Part shown: piece after piece, positions 4,499 through 55,657 of the stretch
Layout of the letters: each line of letters starts with the position of its first letter
Position numbering within the stretch: the stretch's first letter is position 1
IMG/VR virus record: IMGVR_UViG_3300027782_000027
Span: 62,001-126,000 of that record
Strand: one strand, 5' to 3'
Length of the DNA stretch: 64,000 nt
Translations under genes and position numbers: made by a program
The notes under the pieces: model-generated
Database searches by the model: none
The model's input: only the letters and a program-made list of their open reading frames with translations
What the model was told of the DNA's origin: nothing

Positions 4499-5218
4499 AT
4501 GCAAAATTACAAAATATTAGGTCCAAAAGAGACAGGAAAAGGTATTTTAATTGAGATGGACGCAGGTTATGTTTCTCCAACAGAAAAACATAATCAAACA
4601 TTCTTACAAGAAAGTAAGGATTTTAAAGATTATTCTAAACCATTTGAATTTTATGCCGTTCTACAAAAATATAATACACCGAATAGAAACGGTAGAATAT
4701 ATCCTGAAAGAATTTTAAAAAGAGAGTCCGAAAATTATATAAAGAATTATATCGGTAAAAAAACCTCTTTATCTGAACTTAACCACCCTGAATCTTCATT
4801 AATAGATTTAGATAGAGTATCACATATGATTACAGAGATGTGGTGGGATGGTAATGTTCTATTAGGTAAATTGTTACTTCTAACTTCACCAGGGTTCCAT
4901 GAAAGAGGTATCGTATCAACAAAGGGTGACCAAGCGGCAAACCTATTAAGACTAGGTGTGACGTTAGGTATATCATCAAGAGGGGTAGGTTCCTTAAAAA
5001 AAGTAGGTGAACAAAATGAAGTTCAGGATGATTTTGAATTAATTTGTTTTGACTTGGTGTCATCACCATCAACACCAGGAGCTTATTTATTTACTGAACC
5101 TGATGGAAGATTTGCGTTTGAGGAAAACCTAAAAGAAGAAAATGATATGAAAGCTGCAAGAACAGTTAACAAATCGCTTGATTTAATGGGAAGACTTACC
5201 GATTATTTAGGAAAATAA
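4499..5218 (+). CDS. Prohead maturation protease (T4 gp21-like)
   Basis: NRNGRIYP, ELNHPES, LGISSRGVGS and FDLVSSPSTPGA motifs. Confidence 0.93.
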   Translation: MQNYKILGPKETGKGILIEMDAGYVSPTEKHNQTFLQESKDFKDYSKPFEFYAVLQKYNTPNRNGRIYPERILKRESENYIKNYIGKKTSLSELNHPESSLIDLDRVSHMITEMWWDGNVLLGKLLLLTSPGFHERGIVSTKGDQAANLLRLGVTLGISSRGVGSLKKVGEQNEVQDDFELICFDLVSSPSTPGAYLFTEPDGRFAFEENLKEENDMKAARTVNKSLDLMGRLTDYLGK

Positions 5219-6977: not shown

Positions 6978-8867
6978 ATGGGAGCATTATTAGAAAGTGG
7001 ATTAGTTGGTAACATTGGTCTTAAGCACTTGAAAGTTATCAAAGAAGACACAGTAAACAAATGGGACAAATTAGGGTTCCTTGAAGGTCTTAAAGGCCAC
7101 CTAAAAGAAAATGTAGCACAATTGTATGAAAACCAAGCGTCACATTTGATTAACGAAGCATCTTCTACGGCAGATTCAGGTTCATTCGAGACTGTGGTAT
7201 TCCCTATCATCAGACGTGTGTTCTCTAAATTATTGTCTAACGAAATCGTTTCTGTACAAGCTATGAACTTACCAATCGGTAAATTGTTCTACTTCGTACC
7301 ACAAATCCAAGGTTATTCTGGTGGTTCAGCTATTAACGGATTAAACGTTACTTCTGGTGACCACTACCCGCCTGTAGGTTCTCCTGGAAACTATCCTGGA
7401 AGTCCTGACGCAGGTTATGGTTCAGGAACAGGAAGTGCTAACAACCCAACTTACGCGAAAAACCTTTATGATTTATTCTACGAAGGAACTGAGCCAGGTC
7501 TTAACCCAGCAGGTTTATTTGATTATTCTAAAGGACGTTTTGTAACACTAACAGGTTCATGTCCAACAGTTGCTTGGTCTGACGGAGCGTTAATTCCTTC
7601 AGGTTATACTGTACAAGGTGGTTCTAACACTGAATTTAGAAAAATTATTGTAGCACTTTCAGGTTTAACTTCTGCAGGTAATGGTAAGTTAATTGGACCT
7701 GACGGACAAGAGCAGGATACTGAATCTTTCTTATCTGGATTGGTTCTTTATACTAATAACGCAACTGTTGCGTCTAACTTAGGTACTAATACATATACAC
7801 CACTTTTATACCGTGTTGTAACTCAAAAGTATGGTCAATCAATATACGGTCCGAACTATACTAGTACTCAGGCAACTTTTGGTAGTACTTTCGCAAGTAC
7901 AACTCAAGGTAACGGTGGTTACTATGATAACGTATGTAATACACAAGGTTATATCTATTTAGAGATTGACACTCAAGTTCCGGCATGTATTGCTTGTGGA
8001 CAGTCAACTCCTGATGGATATTCTGGAGCAACATTAACTGCTACACAATGGAGTGGTTCTTCTGCTAATACTAACATCCAAGCAGCTTGGAGACGTTACG
8101 AAGAGTTAGAATTTGAAGATAAAATTGGTGAAGTTTCTTTTGACCTTGAGTCAGTAACTGTATCTGTTACAGAAAGAAAATTAAGAGCACAATGGTCTCC
8201 AGAAATGGCACAAGACGTTGCAGCGTTCCACAACATCGATGCTGAAGCTGAATTAACAGCTTTATTATCTGAACAAGTGGCGGCTGAAATTGACCGTGAA
8301 ATCTTACGTGACTTACGTAAAGGTGCAGCGTGGACATTACGTTGGGATTACAACGGATGGAAGCGTCTGAACAACCAATCAACTCCTTACACTCAAAAGG
8401 ACTGGAACCAAACGTTGATTACTGCAATCAACCAAATTTCAGCTCAAATCCACAAGTCTACTTTAAGAGGTGGAGCTAACTGGATTGTTGTATCTTCTGA
8501 AATCAGTGCAATCTTTGATGACTTGGAATACTTCCACGTATCAAATGCGGCCCCTGAGCAGGACCAATTCAACATGGGTATCGAGAGAGTTGGTACATTA
8601 AGTGGTCGTTACCAAGTATACCGTGACCCATACTTCCCAGCTAACACTGTGTTGATTGGTCATAAAGGTACTTCTTTATTGGATACTGGTTACATCTACG
8701 CTCCATACGTACCGTTACAATTAACTCCAACAATGTATAACCCATTCAACTTTACTCCTATCAAGGGTATCATGACAAGATACGCGAAGAAGATGGTGAA
8801 CAATCGCTTCTATGGTCGTATCATCGTTGATGGTGTTCGTACATTCGATTTGAATGAATTAAGATAA
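6978..8867 (+). CDS. Major capsid protein (T4 gp23-like) with enlarged insertion domain
   Basis: VSVQAMNLPIGKLFY, TERKLRAQWSPEMAQD, IDAEAELTALLSEQVAAEIDREIL and GYIYAPYVPL motifs. Confidence 0.95.
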   Translation: MGALLESGLVGNIGLKHLKVIKEDTVNKWDKLGFLEGLKGHLKENVAQLYENQASHLINEASSTADSGSFETVVFPIIRRVFSKLLSNEIVSVQAMNLPIGKLFYFVPQIQGYSGGSAINGLNVTSGDHYPPVGSPGNYPGSPDAGYGSGTGSANNPTYAKNLYDLFYEGTEPGLNPAGLFDYSKGRFVTLTGSCPTVAWSDGALIPSGYTVQGGSNTEFRKIIVALSGLTSAGNGKLIGPDGQEQDTESFLSGLVLYTNNATVASNLGTNTYTPLLYRVVTQKYGQSIYGPNYTSTQATFGSTFASTTQGNGGYYDNVCNTQGYIYLEIDTQVPACIACGQSTPDGYSGATLTATQWSGSSANTNIQAAWRRYEELEFEDKIGEVSFDLESVTVSVTERKLRAQWSPEMAQDVAAFHNIDAEAELTALLSEQVAAEIDREILRDLRKGAAWTLRWDYNGWKRLNNQSTPYTQKDWNQTLITAINQISAQIHKSTLRGGANWIVVSSEISAIFDDLEYFHVSNAAPEQDQFNMGIERVGTLSGRYQVYRDPYFPANTVLIGHKGTSLLDTGYIYAPYVPLQLTPTMYNPFNFTPIKGIMTRYAKKMVNNRFYGRIIVDGVRTFDLNELR

Positions 8868-17344: not shown

Positions 17345-17360
17345 GATATTTAGTGGAAAT

Positions 17361-19964: not shown

Positions 19965-19967
19965 ATT

Positions 19968-21541: not shown

Positions 21542-21544
21542 TAT

Positions 21545-22369: not shown

Positions 22370-22371
22370 AA

Positions 22372-22406
22372 TTTTTTTTATTTTTTTTATTTTTTTTATT
22401 TTTTTA
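22372..22406. repeat. (T8A)3-T7A microsatellite (A-rich leader on the minus strand)
   Basis: Read directly between the rmlC and rmlD genes. Confidence 0.8.
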
Positions 22407-23779: not shown

Positions 23780-23807
23780 TATTTTATAAATTTATATTTT
23801 TTTACTT

Positions 23808-24632: not shown

Positions 24633-24639
24633 ATATATT

Positions 24640-25563: not shown

Positions 25564-25585
25564 AATATATTTTATTTTTTATTTT

Positions 25586-26557: not shown

Positions 26558-26566
26558 ATTTTATTT

Positions 26567-28114: not shown

Positions 28115-28137
28115 ATTATTTTTTTAATTTTAACATT

Positions 28138-28866: not shown

Positions 28867-28870
28867 GTAT

Positions 28871-33144: not shown

Positions 33145-33710
33145 ATTCCAGTACTACCAAATCCGTTTTCACCACGGTCTTTATCATTTATTTGATTAAC
33201 CTCAACTAAATTAACCCATCGTCCTGTAACACATCTTGCGACAACTGCTTGGGCTACTTTCATTCCCTTTTCAATTTTAAACTCTGACTGATTTGTATTA
33301 AAAATAATAACTTTAATCTCTCCTGTATATCCTTCATCTACGGTACCAGGTGAATTTAAAACCATTAAACCTTGATTAATGGCTAAACCACTTTTTGACC
33401 TAACTTGAACTTCAAAATCTTGAGGTAAATCAAAATATATACCTGTTGGAATTAAGGCTCTACCAAACGGAGGTATAATAATTTCTTCATTTGAATATAA
33501 ATCAAATCCACTATCAGATGGGTAATTGTATTTTAATTTTTTATTATTATTTGATTTATATTTTATAGTGATTTTACCATCAAATATTTTTTCAAAATCA
33601 CCTTCAATTTCACCTATATCTAAATTTAAATTTTTTTCACCTTCATTATCTATTTCTTTTAACATTTTTGAAAGTTCATCTAATTTTATATTAAATTGTT
33701 CTTGATTCAT
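33141..33710 (-). CDS. dut: Trimeric dUTPase
   Basis: SGFDL, RSKSG, GTVDEGYTGE, AQAV and RGENGFGSTG motifs. Confidence 0.95.
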   Translation of the reverse strand: MNQEQFNIKLDELSKMLKEIDNEGEKNLNLDIGEIEGDFEKIFDGKITIKYKSNNNKKLKYNYPSDSGFDLYSNEEIIIPPFGRALIPTGIYFDLPQDFEVQVRSKSGLAINQGLMVLNSPGTVDEGYTGEIKVIIFNTNQSEFKIEKGMKVAQAVVARCVTGRWVNLVEVNQINDKDRGENGFGSTGI

Positions 33711-34405
33711 AAATTTGTTAATTTAATTAAAACTTTTATTAATACCTCAACATCTTTTTCACAATAATCTTGTATCTCTTGGTATTTGTTTTCATTCCAA
33801 AATGCGTTATGGACTTTATTACCTGTTACCTCCATATTTTTAGGACTTTCAATACCAAGAGATACACACATTAATTCTAATGAACTGATAGCTCCAAATT
33901 GTCCGTATTGCCAAATTTCTTTTGTGTCAATCGCTTTAATTTCCCACGGTTTAGTATCGTAAGACGGTAAGATAGATGATGGTAAAATACCATTTATTAA
34001 CATTCTTTTTGCCAATACAGGAATATCAAAATTCTTAAGGTTATGTCCGCAAAGAATAAAACCTAATTTGTCAACACGATTTAATAGTGTGTTAGCGTCT
34101 TTAAGTAATACTTTTTCGTCTGAGTTAAAGAAACTTTGTTTTTTAATATCACCCTTTGGGTCAACAAATCCTACTGAAACACAAACAATTTTAGAAAATT
34201 CAGGAACTAATGCCGCACGGTTAACAAAAATTTCGTCCAAACTTAATTCACTATCTTCAGGAAACCTTTTTTTAAACCAATCTAAATAATTAATAAATTG
34301 AAAATGAAGTTCAGGATAATCCTTTTTGAAATTTTCATAATTACTTGAAACTCCTACAGTTTCAATGTCAATAAATAAGATTTTGTGTAATGGATGCTTT
34401 ATCAT
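33707..34405 (-). CDS. Stand-alone PolB-type 3'-5' exonuclease (DEDDy)
   Basis: FIDIET, GHNLKNFDIP and YCEKDV motifs. Confidence 0.85.
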   Translation of the reverse strand: MIKHPLHKILFIDIETVGVSSNYENFKKDYPELHFQFINYLDWFKKRFPEDSELSLDEIFVNRAALVPEFSKIVCVSVGFVDPKGDIKKQSFFNSDEKVLLKDANTLLNRVDKLGFILCGHNLKNFDIPVLAKRMLINGILPSSILPSYDTKPWEIKAIDTKEIWQYGQFGAISSLELMCVSLGIESPKNMEVTGNKVHNAFWNENKYQEIQDYCEKDVEVLIKVLIKLTNL

Positions 34406-35616
34406 ACGATTGATTTATAAAATTCTGCTCTTGTTTTTGTTACGACATCTAAACTATAGTGTTTAGAAACATGTTCATATAGTCTTTCACCCATATCAAT
34501 TCTCATATTTGGATTTTGGACTAATTTCTTAACATATTTTGCCCAATCACTGTGATTTCTTGCGTCATCGACTAGTAATGCGTTCCCATCAGTAAACTCA
34601 CCATTCTTCATTGCGTGTTTTAAGTCAATTGTATAAGGTCCGTAATTAGTTGCAATTAACGCTTTCTTATAAAAACCTGCTTCAATAACTTTAAGTTGTG
34701 ATTTTACTTTGTTAAACATATGTTGTTTAATTGGTGCCAAAGATATATCAAATTTAGAGTAACTACGGGCGTAAGATGTTACGGGTTTTGTCCAAACTCT
34801 TCTATAAGGTTGGTTTTCCTCATTTTCATATGGTGTTTGAACAAATAATTCTAAATGGTTTTTATATTCAGGTGTAACGATTGAATAATTATTTGTAAAT
34901 ATTTTTTCGTAATCATACCATACGGTTTCGTGTGGTTTAATTGGTCTTCTTGTTTGTTCACCTGTCTGTTGGTTAATTTCTGTCATCATACCGCGAGTAT
35001 CAAAACCACAAACAACAAACTGTAAATTTTTCTGAATATCAGAAAGTTTAGATACCATACCATCAAGTAACATCAAATCATGTAGGTGTGAAGAACCTCC
35101 TAACCACCCAACTCTTACCAAGTCAGATTCTTCAGTCGGTTCATTAAATTGAGCCTCTTTATGGTCAATTGCGTTAGGAAAAATTACAACATTTTTATTA
35201 TGTTTTTTTATTTCATCAGCAAATAACTCAGTTGTTGTAGTTACATATTTTGCTACTTTTAAATTCGCAACAATTTTTTCGTGTATTTTTTCTTGAACGA
35301 TTAGTTGATGAAGTGGGTGTTCTTTACCAGGTAACCAATAGTCATCTAAATCACATACTGTAATAATACCTAAAGCGTTAAGAATTGGAACTATTTGTAC
35401 TGACTTATCCATATCTTGACCAAGAGAACGATGGTAATGTATAATTTGGTAGTTTTTAAAATAATTTAAATTAGTTAAATCAGGATTGAATTCAATATCA
35501 ATGTGAAAATCGTCTCCATATAGAGTTTGTAAATGTGTATGTGGAGTTATTGACCTAAATCTACCGACACCAGTAGTATCAGACGGGACTACTAAAACTT
35601 TTATCTTTTCTTTCAT
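34402..35616 (-). CDS. GT-B fold glycosyltransferase
   Basis: DLDDYW, VGWLGGSSHLHDL, DISLAP and KSQLKVIEAG motifs. Confidence 0.85.
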   Translation of the reverse strand: MKEKIKVLVVPSDTTGVGRFRSITPHTHLQTLYGDDFHIDIEFNPDLTNLNYFKNYQIIHYHRSLGQDMDKSVQIVPILNALGIITVCDLDDYWLPGKEHPLHQLIVQEKIHEKIVANLKVAKYVTTTTELFADEIKKHNKNVVIFPNAIDHKEAQFNEPTEESDLVRVGWLGGSSHLHDLMLLDGMVSKLSDIQKNLQFVVCGFDTRGMMTEINQQTGEQTRRPIKPHETVWYDYEKIFTNNYSIVTPEYKNHLELFVQTPYENEENQPYRRVWTKPVTSYARSYSKFDISLAPIKQHMFNKVKSQLKVIEAGFYKKALIATNYGPYTIDLKHAMKNGEFTDGNALLVDDARNHSDWAKYVKKLVQNPNMRIDMGERLYEHVSKHYSLDVVTKTRAEFYKSIV

Positions 35617-35623
35617 AAGTTAA

Positions 35624-35652
35624 ATGATAATCAAAAATAAAAGATATTTCAA
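35624..35652 (-). promoter_or_regulatory. Sigma70-type promoter TTGAAA-N17-TATCAT heading the glycosylation operon
   Basis: -35 at 35652-35647 and -10 at 35629-35624, just upstream of ATG 35616. Confidence 0.6.
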
Positions 35653-35660
35653 CAATAATA

Positions 35661-35684
35661 AAAAAAAAGTCCCATAAGGGACTT
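35661..35684 (-). terminator. Rho-independent terminator
   Basis: AAGTCCC-loop-GGGACTT followed by a T-tract on the minus strand, after the 35705 stop. Confidence 0.75.
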
Positions 35685-35704
35685 CTATAATTTTTTAGGT
35701 TTTT

Positions 35705-36286
35705 TTATTGGAGTTTTTTAACTTTAGATATTTTACCTTCAAATATATGTTTACCAACTTTGATTGTCATAATTTCATTAGATTTTTGAGTTGATTCAAC
35801 CATTAATCCATTTTCAGTTAATACCTCCTCAACAGTTTCTCTAACAATTTTTCTTATGTCATTAGCACTTAATCCAATACCACTATTTGAAGGTTGATGT
35901 TGAGGTTGTGGTTTGTTTTCTACAACAGTTTCTTTACGGGTGCCCATTAATCTTGACGCCTTTTCAATAATATCATCTGATATTGTTGCTTGATATTGTT
36001 GAGCTTGTTGAATTGGGTGTTCCATCATTAACCTTTTAATTGCGTCAGGTAATTTAGAATTTTTTATTCTATCTTCAGTTATTACTGCCGTAGATGCTTT
36101 TGGTGTTTGAGGAGATGAAGACAAATACTCTTCAGGTATGTTATAAGTTGACGGGATTGGAGTCTCATCATATTCTCTAACTAATTGTTGTTGATTTGAT
36201 TTTTTAGGTGTTACACCTCTATCCATATCATTATGTCTATCCATTATCTGTTTAGACACCATTAATTTCTGCATTAAATCATTCAT
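35705..36286 (-). CDS. Hypothetical late protein
   Basis: 193-aa ORF; contains IRKIVRETVEEVLTE. Confidence 0.75.
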   Translation of the reverse strand: MNDLMQKLMVSKQIMDRHNDMDRGVTPKKSNQQQLVREYDETPIPSTYNIPEEYLSSSPQTPKASTAVITEDRIKNSKLPDAIKRLMMEHPIQQAQQYQATISDDIIEKASRLMGTRKETVVENKPQPQHQPSNSGIGLSANDIRKIVRETVEEVLTENGLMVESTQKSNEIMTIKVGKHIFEGKISKVKKLQ

Positions 36287-36671
36287 TTTCTAATTCAAAT
36301 TTTGTACAAACTTTTAATCCTACCATTCCTTTATCATCAGGATTATAATTTGGTCTGATTACGTCAAATTTATCTCTAGGGTCTACTGAAAAGTTACCTA
36401 TTCTATCAATCCTAAATAATCTCCACCCCGGTAATGGTTGGTCACCAATTTGTGCGGTGTGAGACGCTCCTTCTCTTTCCCATGCTCTTATTACTTTATT
36501 TCCTCTTTTTGAGGTTCCGTAACAAAAAGGTTCAATTACACGAAGTCCTTTACCCCCATTATCTTTACCATTGTAGTAAATTGTAACCAAATTTCTATTT
36601 TTAATAGCATTGGTTATTTCATCGCTACTAGCTTCAAAAATAAGTTGTTTTATTACGTTGTAAAGCTTCAT
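36279..36671 (-). CDS. Stand-alone WYL-domain protein
   Basis: VTIYY...R.IEP...Y...IRAW...WRLFRIDRI motif. Confidence 0.8.
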   Translation of the reverse strand: MKLYNVIKQLIFEASSDEITNAIKNRNLVTIYYNGKDNGGKGLRVIEPFCYGTSKRGNKVIRAWEREGASHTAQIGDQPLPGWRLFRIDRIGNFSVDPRDKFDVIRPNYNPDDKGMVGLKVCTKFELENE

Positions 36672-36961
36672 TCTGCAGATGGAAACTGATATGGTTTACT
36701 TGAGTTAAATTTATTAATTTTAATATCGTCTTTTCTTTCGATTTGGTCTTGTCTTGAACCTCCATTTGCGACATCTAAGAAAATACCTGTTCCTTTTCCT
36801 TTATCATCCCCATCAGCAATTGCGTCAGGATTTGTAACCCCATATTCATTTTTTTCGGGTTTGTAGTCATTTCTAACTATTAAATCTTTTCTAATTTTAT
36901 CAGCAATTGTTGATAAATTATTTGATGGTTGTTCTAAATTTATTGGGTCTTTTGATGCCAT
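36668..36961 (-). CDS. Hypothetical late protein
   Basis: 97-aa ORF overlapping its neighbour. Confidence 0.7.
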   Translation of the reverse strand: MASKDPINLEQPSNNLSTIADKIRKDLIVRNDYKPEKNEYGVTNPDAIADGDDKGKGTGIFLDVANGGSRQDQIERKDDIKINKFNSSKPYQFPSAE

Positions 36962-44468: not shown

Positions 44469-45599
44469 TTATATTACATACATATTTCTTGGGAACGCTC
44501 TGAACTTCATTTGTTTGTTAAGATTTTCAGCAATTAATGCCTCACGTTCCATTATTTTTTCAGGTCTTAATCTTGTCAATCTACCATCTGCTCCAATTAA
44601 CTCCTCAATCAATTTTGTTTTTTCATCTTTACCCTCAGTGGCTAAAGTAGCGTAATCCATAGTTAATTCAGAGTCAGGTGTCTTTAAGTTTCCTGAATAT
44701 TTTCCTCTAACTTTTGATAATGTTTCTTTACAACTTGCTACAAAATATCTTCTAACCCACTGTTGTGCGGGGTCATTTAAGTCAACCCAACCAATTGAAT
44801 TCATCGGAACATCTGAAGGAAGTTTAATAATATCAGGATTTGCAGCTAAACAAGCATCTCTATCCTGAGGTCCAACATCGTAATACCAATACCATACTTG
44901 GTGATGGTTTAATGATGAACTACCAAAGTCAAATTTACCACCAGGTGTCTGCATTAAATGAATTGCCTTTTTACCATTAGGTAATCCTGTTATTCTATAA
45001 GTTAAATCACCACCAATAATTCTTCTTTGGATATTAATTTCTTGCATTCTTAATAACATATCAAATGCGGATGTCATAAAGTATGAACCCGAACCACCCA
45101 TTTGAGCAAAACCACCAGGTCCACCAATGCCTGTACCACCTAAAGCCCCAAAACTCCATGGGTCAAATAATACATTATTTAACGTTGCCGGTGTAAACCA
45201 TAATAATTCATTGATTTCACGACCTGCGGGTATTTCATAAATCTGTTGGTTTGGAACTAATGTGATATAATCTTTTTTAAGTTCCCAATCACCAAGAGGT
45301 GATGATTGTAAACCAACTATTTTAGAGTATGCCTGAGCATATCTGTTTTCGTAATCTAAACTCTTAGTTACAAATGCTCTTGATAATGATTGTGTATCTA
45401 AATTTAAATTATATAATGAAGTCCATTGTGATTCAATTAACCAATCTTGAACATATTGGGAGTAATCCCCGATAGAAAATTCCAAGATTGAATCCATTTG
45501 TTCATCTTCTAATTCAATTGAACGAATTGGTGCTCCGAGTACGTGTCTAACTTTTGTATATAGTTGACTTCTGTATGGTTCTGCGATTATTGTATTCAT
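44469..45599 (-). CDS. Neck/head-tail adaptor (T4 gp13-like)
   Basis: KVRHVLGAPIRSIELEDEQMD (compare gp13 LR.LGAP...VE...Q..D). Confidence 0.8.
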   Translation of the reverse strand: MNTIIAEPYRSQLYTKVRHVLGAPIRSIELEDEQMDSILEFSIGDYSQYVQDWLIESQWTSLYNLNLDTQSLSRAFVTKSLDYENRYAQAYSKIVGLQSSPLGDWELKKDYITLVPNQQIYEIPAGREINELLWFTPATLNNVLFDPWSFGALGGTGIGGPGGFAQMGGSGSYFMTSAFDMLLRMQEINIQRRIIGGDLTYRITGLPNGKKAIHLMQTPGGKFDFGSSSLNHHQVWYWYYDVGPQDRDACLAANPDIIKLPSDVPMNSIGWVDLNDPAQQWVRRYFVASCKETLSKVRGKYSGNLKTPDSELTMDYATLATEGKDEKTKLIEELIGADGRLTRLRPEKIMEREALIAENLNKQMKFRAFPRNMYVI

Positions 45600-45615: not shown

Positions 45616-45622
45616 ATAAATA
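45616..45622 (-). promoter_or_regulatory. TATTTAT putative late promoter (neck)
   Basis: Upstream of the 45599 start. Confidence 0.65.
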
Positions 45623-47128
45623 TCAATTCACAGTATAAATTAAATCTTGTGTTGGGATTTTAAACATACTTGAACTAAAAGCGACAGTTTTGTTTTTAAA
45701 AATATAAACTTCTTTATTAATATTTGAGAAAATTAATAAGTCGGTATTAAACTTTTTGACAAAACCTTTAATTTTAATATTATAGAAACCGTCAATTACT
45801 TCCATACTTAAAATTGGTTTAACTTGAGCGTTTTGTATTTTGTTATCAAAATTCACTGTTAAATCAGTTCCCGCAAAATCTTCTTTTGAACCTAAACTAC
45901 CAACTACAACTGCAGTTCCTTCACCAAATTCTTGATTGATTTTTTTTGCGACATACTCCTCAAGTTGACCACCTTTGTCATGTGTTCTTTTTAAAAGTTT
46001 CATAATCTTATCAAGAGTTTTAGACCCTTTAAAAATTCTTTCACCAAAAAACTCCATATAAGAACAAAATTTATTTATTTCTTCTACTTGTTGTAAAGGT
46101 GTTACCCCAATAAAATTTAATGTGGGTTTATTTAGTTTCGTAAGGACTGCGTTTAAATCATCAACTAAAATCTTAAACCCAATATAATTTGTATTTAATT
46201 TATTAATTACTGAACGACCTGGTTGTTCTAAGTCGTAAATACCTGAAGATGAACCTTCGGAGTGTTGATTGTTTTCATGCCACTTATCAGACAAAACCGT
46301 TTTCAACGTATTATCAATACATCGTCTGTAAGTCCAAAGAACATTTTTGTTGTTACTAAAAATATCTGAGTAATCCGACACGTTTTCGTATAACAGTTTT
46401 TTTGGTGAAGTTGATTCGTTCAATTTTTTTTCAGTTTTTGATTTGTATAACTCATTAACAAATTCCCAGTTGATTACTTCCCAAAAATTTTCAATATATT
46501 CGTCTCTTTTGTTTTGGTATTTTAAATAATATGCGTGTTCCCATAAATCCAAACCTAACAACGGAAAACCACCTTGATTAATTATATTCATAAGTGGGTT
46601 GTCTTGATTTGAGGTGGACATTACTTTTAATCTACCTGTATCGGTTAGAACTAACCAACACCATCCTGAACCAAATCGTTTTTTTGATATTTCTTCAAAT
46701 TTAGTTTTGAAATTACGATACGTCCCAAATTGTTTAACAATTTTTTCAAACACTTCACCACTTGGTTTTTGCGGTGTGGGTGATAACATCTTCCAAAACA
46801 ATGCGTGGTTAAATGCTCCACCTGCGTTATTTCTTATTGTTGTATTATACTTTGATATCTGTTTAACAATATTCTCCAATTCAACATCACCATAATCTTT
46901 TTTACGAAGAGCTGAATTTAATTTTTTAACATACCCCTTGTAATGTTTTTGATAATGAAATTTCATTGTCTCAGGGTCAATAAATCTTCTTAACGATGCG
47001 TATCCATACGGTAGTTTATCAATACCAATGGTTTTCATTTCATTAATAAAAAATTTGGTTTCAGGTTGAGTTTCCTCACCTAACAAACGACTAACTAATG
47101 ACTCTGATACTATATTTAACGATTTCAT
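45623..47128 (-). CDS. Mn/Fe superoxide dismutase fused to a ~260-aa C-terminal domain
   Basis: LPYGY...FHYQKHY, NAGGAFNHALFW and GLDLWEHAYYLKYQN, with all four metal ligands present; long extra C-terminus. Confidence 0.9.
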   Translation of the reverse strand: MKSLNIVSESLVSRLLGEETQPETKFFINEMKTIGIDKLPYGYASLRRFIDPETMKFHYQKHYKGYVKKLNSALRKKDYGDVELENIVKQISKYNTTIRNNAGGAFNHALFWKMLSPTPQKPSGEVFEKIVKQFGTYRNFKTKFEEISKKRFGSGWCWLVLTDTGRLKVMSTSNQDNPLMNIINQGGFPLLGLDLWEHAYYLKYQNKRDEYIENFWEVINWEFVNELYKSKTEKKLNESTSPKKLLYENVSDYSDIFSNNKNVLWTYRRCIDNTLKTVLSDKWHENNQHSEGSSSGIYDLEQPGRSVINKLNTNYIGFKILVDDLNAVLTKLNKPTLNFIGVTPLQQVEEINKFCSYMEFFGERIFKGSKTLDKIMKLLKRTHDKGGQLEEYVAKKINQEFGEGTAVVVGSLGSKEDFAGTDLTVNFDNKIQNAQVKPILSMEVIDGFYNIKIKGFVKKFNTDLLIFSNINKEVYIFKNKTVAFSSSMFKIPTQDLIYTVN

Positions 47129-47133: not shown

Positions 47134-47140
47134 ATAAATA
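47134..47140 (-). promoter_or_regulatory. TATTTAT putative late promoter (SOD fusion)
   Basis: 5 nt upstream of the 47128 start. Confidence 0.6.
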
Positions 47141-47141: not shown

Positions 47142-48902
47142 TTACTTACTATTGATTTCGTTAAGTATTTGTTCAACAATATCTACAGAACTTTCGTCAA
47201 TATCACCCATAACCGTACCAATTATCTGTTTCTTCCTTGTAAGAATATCATAAATAACTCCTTCAATAGAGTTATCAAATAATGGATAGTATATTGAAAC
47301 TGAATTTTTTTGTCCATATCTATACGCTCGGTCTTCGGCTTGAGCATGTTCAGCGGGTACAAACGATAAGTCATTCATAATAACGGCCTCACCAGCGGTA
47401 AGTGTCAATCCAACCCCCGCAGCTTTCATGTTACCACAAAAAACTTGTATTTTATCACTCTCTTGGAACTTGTCAACCGCATCCTGTCTTGCGGGTTTTG
47501 ATGTTGACCCATCTAAATAAACAGACTTCTTACCAAAATGTTCGTGTATCTTTTTTAAAGGTTCAGTGAAGTTACTGAAGATAATAACTTTTTTACCCTG
47601 TTCAATAATGTTCTCAGCAAGTTCAATTGTTATAGATATTTTTTCTTCAGCAATTACCTGTCTTACTTTCATAAGTTTTGAAAACTGAACTGAGAGAGAC
47701 CTTGACTCATCTTGTCTATTATTATACCAATCATAATACTCACCCATCAACCCTTCATACAATCTTGATTTTAAACGAAGATAAACAGGTGTGATAATTT
47801 TTTCAGGTAAATCTAAAACTTCAGTCTTTAATCTTCTTAATATTTGACGTGAAGTTCTTTCTCTTAATTCTTCTAAATTAGATGCTCCTGTCACATTCCA
47901 AATCTTTTTACCACCAACTCTAAACTGATACCCACCACAATATCTAATTGCATATGCTTGCCAGTTTTGACTCACAGGACTATCAATAAGTTTTAAGATA
48001 TTATAATAATTCATGGGACGAGAAGTCATTGGTGTCCCCGTTAATAACCAAAGTTTTTTAATGTTTTTGGTTACATCCATTATAATCTTTGTTCTTTGAG
48101 CCTGAGCATTTGAAACATAATGGGCTTCATCAATAATAACCAAATCAAATTTTGAATTAAGAATTGTTGAACCATTTTTATCTTTTGGGTCGTGAAAGTT
48201 TTTCAGGATATCGTAATTTACAATTACGTAATCCGACAATTCAAACTTTTTACCTTCACAGATATAAACTGATTTGTCGGTATAGTTTTTAATTTCTCTT
48301 TCCCAATTTATTTTAAGAGATGCCGGACATATGATTAAAATTCTATTTGTACCGCTTTCTAATGAAGCAATCACCGCAGAAGTGGTCTTACCAAGTCCCA
48401 TGTCATCCGCCAAAATGAACTTATCGTTCTTTAATAATTTTTCTATCGCTTCTTTTTGATGAGCAAGTGGTGGTCGGTTTTCATATTTTGTATAATCAAC
48501 ATCAACCAAGTTTTCGGTGTATTGTTTAATAACCGCAGCTCTCGGTATCCAAAAATCATGGATAGTCTCTCCACTAAAAATTTTACCCCAAATGTGATAT
48601 GACTTATCTTTTTCAACTAAAATTTTTTCAACGTATATTTTATCAGGTTCCTTAATAAAAGGATTGTCAGCAACAAGTTTTTGTGAAAAGTATGAATCAA
48701 TCTCAACCCATTTTTTAGCAACTTTTGGAACTACTGAATTGTAGTCAATAACATAATCACATTGAGCTCTTGTTGGAAGATACTTTTTATTTGAATCAAT
48801 CTGTTTTTTTAATTTGAGGATATAGTTATTTGACCCCTGATAATTTTCAAGAATAGATATTGCTTGTTGTTCAATACTTAAATGTCCTGTAGAAGTTGTC
48901 AA
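47142..48902 (-). CDS. SNF2-family (SMARCAL1/HARP-like) helicase
   Basis: LADDMGLGKT, IIDEAH, LTGTP, GVGLTL and QAEDRAYRYGQ motifs; TTG start. Confidence 0.93.
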   Translation of the reverse strand: MTTSTGHLSIEQQAISILENYQGSNNYILKLKKQIDSNKKYLPTRAQCDYVIDYNSVVPKVAKKWVEIDSYFSQKLVADNPFIKEPDKIYVEKILVEKDKSYHIWGKIFSGETIHDFWIPRAAVIKQYTENLVDVDYTKYENRPPLAHQKEAIEKLLKNDKFILADDMGLGKTTSAVIASLESGTNRILIICPASLKINWEREIKNYTDKSVYICEGKKFELSDYVIVNYDILKNFHDPKDKNGSTILNSKFDLVIIDEAHYVSNAQAQRTKIIMDVTKNIKKLWLLTGTPMTSRPMNYYNILKLIDSPVSQNWQAYAIRYCGGYQFRVGGKKIWNVTGASNLEELRERTSRQILRRLKTEVLDLPEKIITPVYLRLKSRLYEGLMGEYYDWYNNRQDESRSLSVQFSKLMKVRQVIAEEKISITIELAENIIEQGKKVIIFSNFTEPLKKIHEHFGKKSVYLDGSTSKPARQDAVDKFQESDKIQVFCGNMKAAGVGLTLTAGEAVIMNDLSFVPAEHAQAEDRAYRYGQKNSVSIYYPLFDNSIEGVIYDILTRKKQIIGTVMGDIDESSVDIVEQILNEINSK

Positions 48903-50953: not shown

Positions 50954-53900
50954 ATGGCAACATCAAACAAAGTTTTCGTCTCGCCGGGTGTATATACATC
51001 AGAAAGAGACCTATCATTTGTTTCACAAAGTGTCGGAGTTACTACTTTAGGTATAGTTGGGGAAACCTTAAAAGGTCCTGCGTTTGAACCTATATTTATC
51101 TCAAGCTACGGAGAATTTGAAACTTACTTCGGTGGTACACTTCCGGAAAAATTTGTGAACACACAAATCCCAAAATATGAAGCGGCATACATTGCTAAAT
51201 CATATTTACAACAATCAAATCAACTTTTTGTAACAAGAGTTTTAGGTTTATCAGGTTATGACGCAGGTTCTTCTTGGTCTATTACTACTGTCGCGAATGT
51301 TGATTGTAATACAGTAGGACTAACTGGAGGAACTTCGTATAGTTTTAATTTTACAGGTTCAACTGCTTCAACAACTTCAATACAGTTTACTTCAGCAGTA
51401 CCTTCAGTAATTTCAGGTAATACTTACTACTCAAATAATTACACAGCATTAGATGGAACTAATTCATCAATATTGTCAGATTTAAGAAATCAGATATCAA
51501 GTATTTTATCAAGTAATTCATTATCAGCATCATCGGCGTATTATTTCGGACCTGTTTCAGGGACTCAAGTTAATGCGAATGTTGTTGCTGGTTTAACTGC
51601 TGCGACAAACGTATTTGATGTAGATAGTATCAGCGCATCAACAATAGATTATTGTTCAAGTGTAAACGACACTTGGTTCTACGCTAACTTTGTACCACCT
51701 GCAACAGGTGAGGCATATTACGGAAATTCTTTTTATAGTAGAATCGGTTCTTTATCAGGAACTGCATTTGGAACCTCTGGAAGTTTTACAGGAACTGTTT
51801 CAGGGTTTTATTATGGATTTTCAGGTTTAACTTATTCAGGATATAATGATTTAGTAATTGCGACACTTCGTTCAAGAGGTGTTACTAATTATTCATCAAC
51901 TCAACATGGTCCTGATTATCAAGTAACTGGAACATCTAACGTTCAAATGGTTTGTACTGGAAGTTACTCAGCGGTAACACAAAATCCATTTGCAACATTT
52001 GTAATTTCAGGTTTAAGTTACGACTCTACGTCGTTTAGTTTTGAAACTTCGTTTACACCGTCAAATGCTAACTTTATAACTAAAGTATTTGGAGTTGAAA
52101 ACTTCGCTAAAGACCAAACTGAAGTTCCTTTATTTACTGAAGAAAGATATTCTACGTTATTATCTTATGGATATAATAAAGGATTTATTAGAGGTTTAAA
52201 TTGTTCTTTAACTGCTTTACCTGAAGCTAGAAATAATAGTGTGGATTCAATTGCATATTATTTAGAGAGATATCAAACACCTCAATCACCATGGGTTGTT
52301 TCAGAATTACGTGGTAATTTAGTTTATAGATTATTCAGAGCAATTACAATTTCTGACGGAAATGACGCTAACGCTGAAATTAAAATTTCAATCGCAAACA
52401 TTTCATTTAACAACGGAACATTTGATTTGATTGTTAGAGATTTCTTTGACACGGATTCTAACCCTGTTGTTTTGGAGAAATTTACTAATTGTAGTATTAA
52501 TCCTGGTGAAAATAACTACATCGCTAAAAAAGTTGGTAGTTCAGATGGTGAGTTTGCAATTAAGTCGAAATTTATAATGGTTGAAGTTAACACGGAAGCT
52601 CCGGTTGACGCACTTCCTTGTGGATTTGAAGGTTTTGAAACTCGTAAATACACAGGTGCTAAATCACCATTCCAAATTTATAAGACAAAGTATGATTACC
52701 CAGGTGAAGTTATTTATAACCCACCATTCGGAACTACTTCAGGTGCTGATAACTCTGTACAAAGTTCAGGTGATAATATAAGAAGAACTTACTTAGGTAT
52801 TTCTTCAGCAGTGGCGTTCTCGTCGGATTCACCGGGTTATGACCCAGATTTCTTCCAATACAAAGGAATGCCAAATCCAACAACAACTACTTGTACTGAA
52901 GCAAATCATGTAACTTGGGGATTACAAACTAAAGGTTTCCACATGGATAGTGGAGCAACTTCAGTAACTATTGCAAATGTTTACTCAAATAGTGGACAAA
53001 CAGCGTTTTATGTTGGGGCGGGAGCGTTTAGTTCTGAACCTACTTCACAAACTAGTCCATATTACTTCTTATACTCTCGTAAGTTTACTTTCTTGGTACA
53101 AGGTGGTTTTGACGGATGGGATATCTATCGTGAATACAGAACAAATGCTGACCGTTACAGATTAGGTAATACTGGTTACAAGCAAGGAGCGTTAGCGGGT
53201 TGTGTACCTTACACAGATGCAACAGGATGGGGAGCGTTTAAACAAATCACAGTTGGTGATAACACTGTTGATTACGCAAACACTGACTATTACGCATACC
53301 TATTAGGTGTTCAACAATTTGCAAATCCTGAGGTAACAAATATCAACGTGTTAGTAACACCTGGTATTGATTATGTTAACAATGGTGATTTAGTTGAACA
53401 AGTAATTGATGTTGTTGAGAACGACAGAGCGGATTCAATCTATATCTGTACGAGTCCTGACTTCAACTTGTTACAACCATCAACTTCAATGGATAATTTA
53501 ATTTACCCACAAGAGGCGGTTGATAACTTGGAAAATACTAATATCGATTCTAACTACACCGCAACTTACTACCCATGGGTTCTTACTCGTGATACAGTAA
53601 ATAACACTCAAATTTATATTCCAGCAACTGCTGAAGCGACAAGAAATTTCGCCTTAACAGACAACATCGCGTTCCCTTGGTTCGCAACCGCTGGTTATAC
53701 AAGAGGTGTGGTAAACGCAGTTAGAGCTCGTAAGAGATTAACTCAAGAAGATAGAGACACTCTTTACAAAGGAAGAATTAACCCAATTGCTACATTCAAC
53801 GACGTTGGAACAGTTATTTGGGGTAATAAAACTCTTCAAATCAGAGAGTCAGCTCTTGACAGAATTAACGTAAGAAGATTGTTATTACAAGCTCGTAAGT

Positions 53901-54169
53901 TGATTTCAGCAGTAGCCGTAAGATTATTGTTCGAACAAAACGACAACTTGGTAAGACAACAGTTCTTAGATTCTGTTAATCCAATCTTAGATGCAATTCG
54001 TAGAGACAGAGGTTTATATGACTTCAGAGTTACTGTTCAAAATACACCTGAAGACTTAGATGCTAACCAAATGGTAGGTAAGATTTACATCAAACCAACT
54101 AAAGCTCTTGAATTCATTGACATTGAGTTCTTAATCACTCCAACAGGAGCGTCGTTTGAAAACATCTAA
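50954..54169 (+). CDS. Tail sheath protein (gp18-like, 1071 aa)
   Basis: FVSPGVYTSERDLS, WFATAGYTRG, INPI, WGNKTL, RINVRRLL and IKPTKALEFI motifs. Confidence 0.95.
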   Translation: MATSNKVFVSPGVYTSERDLSFVSQSVGVTTLGIVGETLKGPAFEPIFISSYGEFETYFGGTLPEKFVNTQIPKYEAAYIAKSYLQQSNQLFVTRVLGLSGYDAGSSWSITTVANVDCNTVGLTGGTSYSFNFTGSTASTTSIQFTSAVPSVISGNTYYSNNYTALDGTNSSILSDLRNQISSILSSNSLSASSAYYFGPVSGTQVNANVVAGLTAATNVFDVDSISASTIDYCSSVNDTWFYANFVPPATGEAYYGNSFYSRIGSLSGTAFGTSGSFTGTVSGFYYGFSGLTYSGYNDLVIATLRSRGVTNYSSTQHGPDYQVTGTSNVQMVCTGSYSAVTQNPFATFVISGLSYDSTSFSFETSFTPSNANFITKVFGVENFAKDQTEVPLFTEERYSTLLSYGYNKGFIRGLNCSLTALPEARNNSVDSIAYYLERYQTPQSPWVVSELRGNLVYRLFRAITISDGNDANAEIKISIANISFNNGTFDLIVRDFFDTDSNPVVLEKFTNCSINPGENNYIAKKVGSSDGEFAIKSKFIMVEVNTEAPVDALPCGFEGFETRKYTGAKSPFQIYKTKYDYPGEVIYNPPFGTTSGADNSVQSSGDNIRRTYLGISSAVAFSSDSPGYDPDFFQYKGMPNPTTTTCTEANHVTWGLQTKGFHMDSGATSVTIANVYSNSGQTAFYVGAGAFSSEPTSQTSPYYFLYSRKFTFLVQGGFDGWDIYREYRTNADRYRLGNTGYKQGALAGCVPYTDATGWGAFKQITVGDNTVDYANTDYYAYLLGVQQFANPEVTNINVLVTPGIDYVNNGDLVEQVIDVVENDRADSIYICTSPDFNLLQPSTSMDNLIYPQEAVDNLENTNIDSNYTATYYPWVLTRDTVNNTQIYIPATAEATRNFALTDNIAFPWFATAGYTRGVVNAVRARKRLTQEDRDTLYKGRINPIATFNDVGTVIWGNKTLQIRESALDRINVRRLLLQARKLISAVAVRLLFEQNDNLVRQQFLDSVNPILDAIRRDRGLYDFRVTVQNTPEDLDANQMVGKIYIKPTKALEFIDIEFLITPTGASFENI

Positions 54170-55168: not shown

Positions 55169-55657
55169 ATGGCTGATTTACTGATGAAAATGCCTTTTCC
55201 GTATGAACCCAAAAAGAAAAATAGATTTATTCTAAGATTTCCTTCTGAATTGGGTATAAACGAATGGTTTGTAGAAACAACAAATAGACCTAAAATAACA
55301 ATTGGAAGTATTGATATTCCTTTTCTAAACACTAAAAGATATGTTGCAGGAAAATACGAATGGGGAACTATCGGTGTTACACTACGTGACCCAATTGGAC
55401 CTTCAGCGGCTCAAGCAATGATGGAATGGGTTCGTTTACACGCTGAATCAGTAACGGGTCGTATGGGTTACGCGGCAGGATATAAGAAAGACGTTGAACT
55501 TGAAATGTTAGACCCGACAGGCGTTGTTATTGAAAAGTGGTCTTTAATCCAATGTTTCTTGACTGACGTTGATTTTGGTTCTCTTGGTTATGCAGACGAC
55601 GCATTAGCTAATATTACATTAACACTTCGTCCTGACTATTGTGTATTACTTTACTAA
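55169..55657 (+). CDS. Tail tube protein (gp19-like)
   Basis: EPKKKNRF...RP......GKYEWGTI.VTLRDPI...YKKD..LEMLDPTG..IEKW; follows the sheath gene. Confidence 0.88.
   Translation: MADLLMKMPFPYEPKKKNRFILRFPSELGINEWFVETTNRPKITIGSIDIPFLNTKRYVAGKYEWGTIGVTLRDPIGPSAAQAMMEWVRLHAESVTGRMGYAAGYKKDVELEMLDPTGVVIEKWSLIQCFLTDVDFGSLGYADDALANITLTLRPDYCVLLY

What the first reader, a model, noticed from the sequence alone, without database searches (positions are those of the whole stretch)
45623..47128. Superoxide dismutase fused to a PD-(D/E)xK-like domain, with protease-type sites flanking the modules
Seen: a complete Mn/Fe-SOD, then a KKLNE|S...LLYE|N linker, then a domain with E(EYV)...D-F-A-G-T-D...A-Q-V-K (about 45815-45970), a pattern typical of restriction-like nucleases. 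It has a late motif and sits beside the neck gene. Inference: a head-packaged polyprotein cut into an antioxidant enzyme and a nuclease-like effector. I do not recall this architecture.
Basis: partly seen in the sequence, partly recalled or inferred. Interest (0 to 1): 0.7.

Follow-up and report, generated by a model that had tools for sequence, protein, structure and literature searches.

The report
Phage SOD fused to Mrr-like nuclease
A freshwater jumbo phage related to T4 has a late gene that joins a complete manganese-type superoxide dismutase to a restriction-enzyme-like nuclease domain, with protease-type cut sites between the modules, so it may be a cargo chain cut up and carried in the phage head, though no protein data yet show this.

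Summary
ORF 45623-47128 (-) encodes 501 aa: a short N-terminal leader, a complete Fe/Mn SOD (all catalytic residues invariant in 26 fusion relatives), a flexible linker, and a 250-aa module. The last 120 residues of that module fold confidently as a PD-(D/E)xK nuclease with an invariant E390...D422...Q435-x-K437 site, the Mrr-like "PD-QxK" variant.

The fusion is not an artefact. It lies in the same slot (SNF2 helicase | X | gp13-like neck) in 46 of 78 related contigs. Other relatives carry leader+SOD only, leader+nuclease only, or SOD joined to other modules.

The gene has the TATTTAT motif found in front of head, neck and tail genes. The phage encodes a T4 gp21-type (S77) prohead protease. 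Three conserved [LI]-x-E sites lie in the two flexible segments that flank the SOD, and two of them copy the capsid protein's predicted maturation site (L-I-N-E|A).

Best reading (about 0.45): a late polyprotein cut into separate enzymes and probably packaged in the head. Packaging, cleavage and both enzyme activities are untested. The main rival is an uncleaved cytoplasmic late enzyme.

It is a new variant of known kinds.

The parts
47134..47140 (-). Late-gene promoter-like motif TATTTAT, 5 nt upstream of the ATG
   Evidence: 17 of 52 copies in the window lie within 60 nt upstream of same-strand starts (about 1.3 expected). These include portal, protease, scaffold, neck, sheath and tube genes, but not the helicase or PolB. 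The motif is conserved upstream of the orthologous gene in L002, L003 and G001.
47024..47128 (-). N-terminal leader, residues 1-35: predicted helix 2-15, a low-confidence stretch 19-31, and the conserved site F-I-N-E30|M
   Evidence: AF2 secondary structure and pLDDT. [LI]xE at E30 in 23/26 fusions. The same leader heads SOD-less homologues and SOD-only homologues.
46451..47023 (-). Fe/Mn superoxide dismutase domain, residues 36-226, Mn-type signature
   Evidence: Pfam PF00081 and PF02777. Best solved relative is 6gsc (deposited name 'Superoxide dismutase'), E 1.8e-60. H58, H108, D194, H198, Q175, Y66 and E197 are invariant in 26/26 fusions.
46376..46450 (-). Flexible linker, residues 227-251, with the conserved sites K-L-N-E238|S and L-L-Y-E248|N
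   Evidence: pLDDT below 50 for residues 234-251. Motif conservation. SOD-only relatives end 0-3 residues before the E238 position.
45986..46375 (-). Helical half of the X module, residues 252-381, with the invariant G-R-S-V-I-N-K-L-N-T-N-Y block; no known fold match
   Evidence: R305, S306, N309, L311 and T313 are invariant. pLDDT is above 90. Fold searches cover only the later nuclease core.
45626..45985 (-). PD-(D/E)xK nuclease-fold core, residues 382-501, with catalytic candidates E390, D417, D422, Q435, K437 (PD-QxK type)
   Evidence: Hjc Z 7.6, I-Ssp6803I Z 6.9, NhoI Z 6.8, HhaI, Eco15I, DpnI, PvuII. Foldseek probability 0.99-1.0 for the best I-Ssp6803I and SPARDA chains. Invariant residues. 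E390 lies on helix alpha1, D422 at the start of a strand, and Q-x-K on the next strand.
44469..45599 (-). Downstream neighbour: gp13-like neck (head completion) protein with its own TATTTAT motif at 45616-45622
   Evidence: phrog_211 head-tail adaptor. PF26809 Phage_T4_gp13 in the orthologues of L002 and L003. Motif.
47142..48902 (-). Upstream neighbour: SNF2-family helicase, which lacks the late motif
   Evidence: Pfam SNF2-rel_dom and Helicase_C. phrog_62..
4499..5218 (+). T4 gp21-type prohead serine protease, the candidate processing enzyme
   Evidence: PF03420 Peptidase_S77, E 1.9e-26. phrog_207 head maturation protease, E 1.1e-43.
6978..8867 (+). gp23-like major capsid protein with predicted maturation site L-I-N-E60|A, the reference for the protease motif
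   Evidence: PF07068 Gp23, E 2.8e-72. E60-A61 aligns with the FLTE-AEIGG position of T4 gp23. LINE followed by A or S is invariant in about 75 relatives.

Best explanation
The gene is a late-transcribed, modular "beads on a string" protein of an uncultured freshwater T4-like jumbo myovirus. Its parts in order are a short leader helix, an active-looking Mn-type SOD, a flexible linker, and a two-part module X (a helical half plus an Mrr-like PD-QxK nuclease core).

The modules are functionally independent. I propose that the phage's T4 gp21-type prohead protease cuts after Glu at the conserved [LI]-x-E sites (E30, E238, E248). This would release free SOD and free X, and it implies that the precursor is incorporated into the prohead and the products travel with the DNA.

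Shown here: the domain identities, the conservation of the fusion, the late-gene motif, the presence of the protease, the conservation and placement of the sites, and the separability of the modules.

Inferred: cleavage, encapsidation, injection and both enzyme activities.
For: 1. Late regulation. TATTTAT lies directly upstream of this gene and of portal, protease, scaffold, neck, sheath and tube genes, but not of the adjacent helicase or PolB. It is conserved upstream of the orthologues in relatives with about 36% protein identity.

2. Protease. The genome encodes an S77 (T4 gp21-type) prohead protease. Such proteases cut C-terminal to Glu, and T4 head proteins carry 10-20-residue N-terminal targeting propeptides (PMC5694885, PMC3012670).

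3. Reference site. The capsid protein's predicted maturation site L-I-N-E|A aligns with the FLTE-AEIGG position of T4 gp23 and is invariant in about 75 relatives.

4. Rarity and placement. [LI]-N-E-[ASM] occurs only 5 times in 19,727 residues of window ORFs: the capsid protein E60, the propeptide end of ORF 9206-9949 (conserved in its relatives), E30 and E238 of this protein, and one other. About 0.13 per 501 aa would be expected.

5. Flexible segments. All three conserved sites fall in the only two low-confidence segments of the AF2 model, residues 19-31 and 234-251.

6. Separable modules. In 78 complete slots, 46 hold SOD+X, 24 hold SOD without X and 8 hold X without SOD. SOD-only proteins stop 0-3 residues before the E238 position.

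7. Other partners. In some relatives the SOD is joined to an HExxH module and to a different restriction-enzyme-like domain. The same [LIM]-x-E|M-K motif still lies before the SOD and K-[LI]-x-E|S after it.

8. Precedent. The chlorovirus PBCV-1 Cu/Zn SOD is a late gene product packaged in virions (PMC7019647).
Against: - No proteomic, structural or expression data exist for any member, so cleavage and packaging are inferred from motifs only.
- An HMM of the leader finds no other ORF in the 240-kb record, so a T4-style shared capsid-targeting sequence is not demonstrated.
- In HExxH-bearing relatives the "leader" helix is internal rather than N-terminal.
- [LI]xE as such is common, about 7 per 501 aa.
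- A nuclease inside a DNA-filled capsid would need to be inert towards the phage genome.
- A dimeric metalloenzyme would have to unfold to leave through the tail.
- The gene also sits beside replication genes (helicase, PolB).
Confidence: 0.45

Rival explanations
1. An uncleaved cytoplasmic late enzyme. The nuclease module acts on DNA late in infection, for example as a Holliday-junction or branch resolvase that clears concatemers before packaging, or to degrade host DNA. The SOD protects the infected cell (phage-mediated ROS defence) or simply provides a dimeric scaffold for the nuclease.
For: - The best structural match is the archaeal resolvase Hjc (Z 7.6), with E/D/(E->Q)/K spacing of 32/13/2.
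- No Endonuclease VII, RuvC, RusA or Hjc family member is detectable elsewhere in the 240-kb record.
- The gene sits beside an SNF2 helicase and PolB.
- The complete relative G001, which lacks X in the slot, keeps a diverged X paralogue elsewhere, consistent with a required function.
- Freshwater phage SODs have been interpreted as host-protecting ROS defence genes (PMC6802176).
Against: - This reading does not explain why three Glu-sites matching the capsid maturation motif are conserved exactly at the module borders.
- It does not explain why SOD-only proteins end at the predicted cut.
- It does not explain why unrelated modules are swapped in and out of the same polypeptide.
- The record is only 82% complete, so the absence of other resolvases is weak evidence.
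- Hjc and PDDEXK_5 profiles do not hit the gene.
Confidence: 0.33
2. X is a structural or DNA-end-binding head-completion component that uses a nuclease fold for DNA binding rather than cutting. It would be assembled at the neck with gp13, and the SOD would be a passenger.
For: Conserved position directly upstream of the gp13-like neck gene, with the same late motif. The invariant helical half with the GRSVINKLNTNY block has no enzymatic assignment.
Against: The full catalytic set E390, D422, Q435 and K437 is invariant over deep divergence, which is more typical of an active site. In G001 the X paralogue is encoded far from the neck genes. X is replaced by another restriction-like domain in some relatives.
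Confidence: 0.1
3. X is a selfish homing endonuclease that landed between the helicase and the neck gene and became fused to a SOD by accident.
For: The top Foldseek match is the homing endonuclease I-Ssp6803I. Language-model and shape searches point to the intron-associated PDDEXK_5 family. One distant relative, P0152, is joined to a ribonucleotide reductase fragment.
Against: X keeps the same syntenic slot across relatives with 32-40% identity and carries a conserved 130-aa helical half and leader. The PDDEXK_5 profile does not hit it. The fusion is under purifying selection in both halves.
Confidence: 0.05

Closest known systems
T4 internal proteins and Alt (capsid-targeting sequence plus gp21 cleavage after Glu), and the processed ejection proteins of giant phages such as SPN3US and phiKZ
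   Same: The phage is T4-like, with an S77 protease and a gp23-like capsid protein. The protein has a short N-terminal leader followed by an [LI]-x-E site, is expressed late, and has several Glu-sites in its linkers, as in the long propeptides of giant-phage head proteins (PMC5694885, PMC3012670).
   Different: No virion data exist. The cargo is a chain of two or three full enzymes rather than one small protein. The leader is not detectably shared with other proteins of the genome. In some relatives another module precedes it.
Chlorovirus PBCV-1 A245R Cu/Zn superoxide dismutase (a late gene product packaged in the virion)
   Same: A virus-encoded SOD expressed late. It is proposed to lower superoxide early in the next infection (PMC7019647).
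   Different: It belongs to a different SOD family (Cu/Zn, not Fe/Mn), comes from a eukaryotic virus, and is a free-standing protein with no nuclease partner or protease sites.
PD-QxK (Mrr-like) subgroup of PD-(D/E)xK nucleases, e.g. BisI-family NhoI and Eco15I, Mrr, and the SPARDA DREN domain
   Same: The core fold matches, with Q-x-K on strand beta3 and Asp at the start of beta2. NhoI (Z 6.8), Eco15I (Z 5.8) and SPARDA chains are among the best structural matches. The PD-QxK class is described in PMC11347163.
   Different: No sequence-profile match to any Pfam nuclease family. It has an extra conserved helical half. It is encoded by a phage rather than being a host defence gene. Dependence on DNA modification is unknown.
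Archaeal Holliday junction resolvase Hjc
   Same: Best Z-score (7.6) over 104 residues. It has the same order and nearly the same spacing of Glu (helix 1), Asp, and (E/Q)-x-Lys.
   Different: Gln replaces the second acidic residue. The Hjc Pfam profile does not match. The test for dimer formation gave no answer. The module is twice the size of Hjc.
Free-standing phage Fe/Mn SODs annotated as ROS-defence auxiliary genes (e.g. Pseudomonas phage PA5oct sodB, freshwater metagenomic phages)
   Same: The same enzyme family is encoded by large phages (PMC6802176).
   Different: Here the SOD carries a leader and conserved Glu-sites, has a late motif, lies in the structural gene region and is usually fused to a nuclease-fold module.

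Membership tests
Fe/Mn superoxide dismutase (Pfam PF00081 + PF02777) | Both domains match above the curated cut-offs | tested here: met
   82.6 bits (cut-off 27) and 140.1 bits (cut-off 20.9). PDB relatives up to E 1.8e-60.
Fe/Mn superoxide dismutase (Pfam PF00081 + PF02777) | Four metal ligands (His, His, Asp, His) and the second-sphere Tyr, Gln and Glu | tested here: met
   H58, H108, D194, H198, Y66, Q175 (in an N-Q-D context, Mn-type by established knowledge) and E197 are invariant in 26/26 fusions.
Fe/Mn superoxide dismutase (Pfam PF00081 + PF02777) | Superoxide dismutation activity and metal specificity | not testable with these tools
   Needs an enzyme assay and metal analysis.
PD-(D/E)xK nuclease superfamily | [quoted passage not shown] | tested here: met
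   Model pLDDT 92.3. The 13 top VIA-align rows (Z 5.0-7.6) are all PD-(D/E)xK-type nucleases. Foldseek PDB, AFDB, BFVD and Atlas searches agree. No single Z reaches 8, so the case rests on consistency plus the motif.
PD-(D/E)xK nuclease superfamily | Catalytic residues: Glu on helix 1, Asp at the start of strand 2, (D/E)-x-K on strand 3 | tested here: met
   E390 lies in helix 370-401, D422 lies before strand 423-427, and Q435-x-K437 lies in strand 430-438. They are invariant or nearly invariant in 60 sequences. Gln takes the (D/E) position, a known active variant (PMC11347163).
PD-(D/E)xK nuclease superfamily | Sequence-profile membership in a curated nuclease family (Hjc, PDDEXK_5, Mrr_cat and others) | tested here: not met
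   No Pfam hit on residues 232-501. No family is shared by the 60 members. PF01870 and PF11645 do not hit the genome. A PDB profile search found nothing.
PD-QxK (Mrr-like) subgroup | Q-x-K on strand beta3, with structural similarity to members of the subgroup | tested here: met
   Q435 is present in at least 90% and K437 in 100% of relatives. NhoI Z 6.8, Eco15I N-terminal domain Z 5.8, and SPARDA Foldseek probability 0.99.
PD-QxK (Mrr-like) subgroup | Modification-dependent DNA cleavage | not testable with these tools
   Needs a biochemical assay on modified and unmodified DNA.
Hjc-type Holliday junction resolvase | Homodimer with an E-D-E-K active site; family profile match | tested here: inconclusive
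   Fold and spacing fit, but Gln replaces Glu. The Hjc profile does not match. The dimer prediction gave no verdict.
T4-type prohead-protease substrate / encapsidated internal protein | The phage encodes a gp21-type protease, and the substrate carries conserved cut motifs after Glu in accessible segments | tested here: met
   S77 protease. E30, E238 and E248 are conserved and lie in low-pLDDT segments. Two copy the capsid protein's L-I-N-E|A.
T4-type prohead-protease substrate / encapsidated internal protein | N-terminal capsid-targeting sequence shared among several head proteins | tested here: not met
   The leader HMM finds only the gene itself in the 240-kb record. The test has low power for peptides of 10-30 residues.
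T4-type prohead-protease substrate / encapsidated internal protein | Presence in virions in processed form | not testable with these tools
   Needs virion proteomics.
Free-standing homing endonuclease | Sporadic distribution; insertion into or beside a cognate target gene | tested here: not met
   Fixed syntenic slot across divergent relatives.

The most novel reading that the evidence does not exclude
The helicase | gp13 slot of this jumbo-phage clade is a natural cargo cassette. Enzymes are strung together behind a leader and separated by prohead-protease sites. The modules seen are an Mn-SOD, one of two different restriction-enzyme-like nucleases, and a small HExxH metallopeptidase-like module. 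The phage would then load a changeable set of free enzymes into its capsid and deliver them with the DNA as a first-strike kit: an antioxidant plus an Mrr-like nuclease aimed at host or competitor DNA. This would be a natural counterpart of the engineered T4 CTS-fusion packaging system, and the first packaged SOD known in a bacteriophage.
Probability: 0.3. Interest if true: 0.8.

Novelty: new variant of a known kind. Interest (0 to 1): 0.6.

Why it matters
Phage SODs are usually treated as metabolic helper genes that work in the host cytoplasm. This one has the regulation, genome position and sequence features of a head-processed protein, and it is joined to an uncharacterised, widely conserved Mrr-like nuclease family (more than 100 clusters at 50% identity, all unannotated).

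If the polyprotein reading is right, it shows how large T4-like phages evolve and exchange injected enzyme cargo through simple domain shuffling between protease sites. It would also give a predictable, testable rule ([LI]-N-E|[AS]) for finding such cargo in metagenomic phages.

If the reading is wrong, the family is still a new nuclease candidate, possibly the missing resolvase of a very abundant freshwater jumbo-phage clade. At least about 600 related contig stretches were found in IMG/VR.

Tried and rejected
- Read-through artefact: rejected. There are 26 fusion clusters down to 32% identity in the C-terminal module, and 46 of 78 related slots have both parts in one frame.
- SOD-less homologues as truncated fragments: rejected. 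None has SOD remnants at its N-terminus.
- Sequence-level assignment of the C-terminal module: nothing from Pfam, PHROGs, tblastn against 50,697 phage records, or a profile against PDB sequences.
- Single origin of the fusion: a tree of the X module interleaves fusions and SOD-less forms, with at least 3 changes forced. This means several losses or exchanges. The order of events was not resolved.
- Shared N-terminal targeting peptide: a leader HMM against all ORF N-termini of the genome found nothing beyond the gene itself. An apparent resemblance to the N-terminus of ORF 10665-11192 is not significant.
- Homodimer prediction for the X module: no verdict. This is not evidence either way.
- Other resolvase families in the genome (Endonuclease VII, RuvC, RusA, Hjc): none found. 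The record is 82% complete, and the PDDEXK_5 search had no positive control.
- Context of the 1109-aa protein P0147, which carries the X module at its C-terminus: uninformative.
- Literature: no paper in the library describes this fusion. SODs in freshwater phages are mentioned only as ROS-defence genes.
Full report
**The object.** ORF 45623..47128 (minus strand) encodes a 501-aa protein, P0001. The window is bases 62001-126000 of a 240,759-bp IMG/VR virus record estimated to be 82% complete. G+C is about 30%. The record has a T4-type morphogenetic module:
- portal (1192-3027);
- Peptidase_S77 prohead protease (4499-5218);
- a very acidic scaffold-like protein (5557-6951);
- gp23-like major capsid protein (6978-8867);
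- gp13-like neck protein (44469-45599);
- tail sheath (50954-54169) and tube (55169-55657).

No cultured phage is close. A 95%-identical protein is in UniProt/BFVD as 'superoxide dismutase [uncultured Caudovirales phage]'. The clade is very common in IMG/VR, with at least about 600 matching stretches for both the capsid and the neck protein.

**SOD half.** Pfam places Sod_Fe_N on residues 36-116 and Sod_Fe_C on 122-226, far above the cut-offs. The nearest solved structures are SODs, many deposited as manganese SODs (6gsc E 1.8e-60). The four metal ligands (H58, H108, D194, H198) and Y66, Q175 and E197 are invariant in all 26 fusion relatives examined. The Gln in the N-Q-D context is the Mn-type position by established knowledge of the family. 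Metal specificity itself is untested.

**C-terminal half.** Residues 232-501 match nothing in Pfam, PHROGs, phage GenBank records or PDB sequences. They define a family of 107 clusters at 50% identity in 1.84 billion representatives and 85 clusters in the 90% collection.

Alignments show an invariant block G-R-S-V-I-N-K-L-N-T-N-Y (residues 304-315). They also show an invariant set G386, E390, D422 and K437, with D417, G420 and Q435 at 90% or more.

An AlphaFold2 model built on 60 sequences is very confident (pLDDT 92.3, pTM 0.85). Residues ~382-501 consistently match PD-(D/E)xK nucleases:
- Hjc Z 7.6, I-Ssp6803I Z 6.9, NhoI Z 6.8, HhaI Z 6.2, Eco15I Z 5.8, and DpnI, PvuII and tRNA-splicing endonucleases;
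- Foldseek probability 0.99-1.0 for the best I-Ssp6803I and SPARDA chains;
- 'Restriction endonuclease', 'PD(D/E)XK endonuclease', DUF4365 and Mrr entries in AFDB clusters;
- PDDEXK_5 by shape and by language-model features.

No single score is overwhelming. The tool notes that Z below 8 can be a common arrangement. However, every top hit belongs to one superfamily, and the invariant residues sit where that superfamily has its active site. E390 is on the first helix, D422 is at the start of a strand, and Q435-x-K437 is on the next strand.

The Q-x-K form is the documented Mrr-like 'PD-QXK' subgroup, to which NhoI and Eco15I belong (PMC11347163, PMC11037411). I therefore accept the nuclease fold and a probably competent active site. 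The protein is not a sequence-level member of any curated nuclease family. The helical half (252-381) has no fold match.

**The fusion is real and conserved, but modular.** In two distant relatives the order sheath ... SNF2 helicase - X - gp13 - small ORF - PolB is the same. One relative has a 294-aa SOD-less X (L002, a 332-kb scaffold). The other has a 509-aa fusion (L003). SOD-less proteins share the first ~15 residues of the leader with the fusions and carry no SOD remnants. So the SOD sits between a common leader and X.

A survey of the slot upstream of gp13 in the 80 most similar IMG/VR contigs gave 78 complete slots: 46 with SOD+X in one frame, 24 with SOD but no X, and 8 with X but no SOD. 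Many of these contigs are near-duplicates, so the numbers are not independent.

In the complete 293,850-bp relative G001, the slot holds leader+SOD only (236 aa, ending right after the SOD). A diverged 296-aa X paralogue that keeps INKLNTNY, E, D and QxK lies 165 kb away.

Eight 'SOD without X' proteins carry an extra N-terminal ~130-aa HExxH module, weakly SprT- or M78-like. Three of these also carry a different ~330-aa C-terminal domain whose nearest leads are again restriction endonucleases such as SmaI, HinP1I, Bsp6I and PvuII (lead level only).

On a tree of the X module, fusions and SOD-less forms are interleaved, with at least 3 changes forced. The full-length model has high per-domain confidence but pTM of only 0.48, with disordered segments at 19-31 and 234-251. 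This fits independent modules on flexible tethers.

**Regulation.** The heptamer TATTTAT is no more frequent in the window than chance predicts (52 copies against 55.6 expected). Its placement is far from random, though. 17 copies lie within 60 nt upstream of a same-strand start, where about 1.3 are expected. These starts are almost all head, neck or tail genes, including this gene (5 nt from the ATG) and gp13. The helicase, PolB and the roughly 25 genes of the sugar-metabolism island lack it. The motif is conserved upstream of the orthologues and of gp13 in L002, L003 and G001, and upstream of the relocated X paralogue. That it is a late promoter is an inference by analogy with T4.

**Protease-type sites.** T4-type and giant-phage prohead proteases cut after Glu, and T4 head proteins have 10-20-residue targeting propeptides (PMC5694885, PMC3012670).

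The capsid protein here reads ...H-L-I-N-E60|A-S-S.... E60-A61 aligns with the FLTE-AEIGG position of T4 gp23, which is the gp21 cut site by established knowledge. LINE followed by A or S is invariant in about 75 relatives and is followed by a variable stretch.

In P0001, conserved [LI]-x-E motifs occur at E30 (23/26 fusions), E238 (21/26) and E248 (25/26 fusions and 16/18 SOD-less proteins). The only other one is the SOD active-site D-L-W-E-H.

Two of the three are literally [LI]-N-E followed by M or S. That four-residue pattern occurs only five times in 19,727 residues of window ORFs:
- capsid E60;
- E24 of ORF 9206-9949, the end of a leader that is conserved as ...N-E|A-[ST] in its relatives;
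- the two sites in P0001;
- one other.

All three P0001 sites fall in the two low-confidence segments. The natural C-termini of SOD-only proteins lie 0-3 residues before the E238 position. In relatives with other partners, the same motifs still bracket the SOD.

**Interpretation.** The simplest account of all these features together is a late polyprotein whose modules are released by the prohead protease. That implies incorporation into the prohead. A late, virion-packaged SOD is known from chlorovirus PBCV-1 (PMC7019647).

I give this reading about 0.45, for these reasons:
- nothing shows cleavage or packaging;
- a shared targeting peptide could not be found;
- the leader is internal in some relatives;
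- a packaged nuclease raises the problem of self-damage.

The main rival, at about 0.33, is an uncleaved late cytoplasmic enzyme. Its nuclease would serve DNA maturation, perhaps as the phage's junction resolvase. No Endonuclease VII, RuvC, RusA or Hjc homologue is detectable in the record, and G001 retains an X paralogue. A DNA-binding neck component (about 0.1) and a domesticated homing endonuclease (about 0.05) are less likely.

**Novelty.** Fe/Mn SODs in phages, PD-QxK nucleases and protease-processed head proteins are each known. The combination has not been described in the searched literature. It consists of a SOD embedded between a leader and a conserved, unannotated Mrr-like nuclease family, in a module-swapping slot bracketed by capsid-type cut sites. 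I rate it a new variant of known kinds, of moderate to high interest, with a clear experimental path.

Noticed in passing
window 9206-9949 (+): The 245-aa protein encoded after the capsid gene has a ~22-residue N-terminal leader ending in Y-L-N-E|A-S. The leader varies in relatives, but the N-E|A-[ST] junction and the following T-T-S...P-I-R-P-G block are conserved. It is probably another prohead-protease substrate, and it has the late motif.
   Followed up: partly
window, 17 sites, e.g. 1177, 3028, 4477, 5532, 45616, 47134, 50912, 54226: A promoter-like motif [AGC]TATTTAT[ACT] lies 1-35 nt upstream of head, neck and tail genes. It is absent before the replication and sugar-metabolism genes.
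   Followed up: yes
window ~17300-36700 (-): A long same-strand island of sugar-nucleotide and glycosyltransferase genes: GDP-mannose 4,6-dehydratase, NAD-epimerases, an RmlD-like protein, UDP-GlcNAc 2-epimerase, and GT2, GT4 and GT17 families. The target (host surface, virion or DNA) is unknown.
   Followed up: partly
L133:2382-3470, L151:1872-3269, L159:1379-3472, L167, L168 (relatives): In some relatives the SOD is preceded by a ~130-aa HExxH module (weakly SprT- or M78-like). The same module heads other phage enzymes in the ESM Atlas (NT5C, nucleotidyltransferases). In three relatives the SOD is followed by a different ~330-aa restriction-endonuclease-like domain.
   Followed up: partly
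L148:773-2386 and L148:2391-3464: One relative has a SOD+X fusion directly followed by a second, diverged X-like gene (358 aa). Its N-terminal helix also ends in I-L-I-N-E|D, and it keeps a Q-V-K motif.
   Followed up: no
P0152 (298 aa, metagenomic): A distant relative of the nuclease core is joined to a fragment of the ribonucleotide reductase large subunit (PF02867, E 2.4e-30). This suggests that some family members act as mobile endonucleases inserted in RNR genes.
   Followed up: no
P0147 (1109 aa; L004:8001-11330) and BFVD A0A8D9CCA0 (1113 aa): The whole X module (helical half plus nuclease core) forms the C-terminus of a 1.1-kaa protein of a marine phage. The first 850 residues have no Pfam match.
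   Followed up: partly
window 6978-8867 (+): The gp23-like capsid protein is 629 aa. It has a Gly/Ser/Thr-rich insertion of roughly 240 residues (about 100-340) that T4 gp23 lacks.
   Followed up: no
window 5557-6951 (+): The scaffold-like protein is extremely acidic and contains an internal duplication (E-E-T-E-E-M-V-Y-E-I-E-M-D-S twice).
   Followed up: no
L002:5950-5975: A G+C-rich hairpin lies between the helicase stop and the late motif of the X gene. This is consistent with separate transcription of the helicase and X.
   Followed up: no
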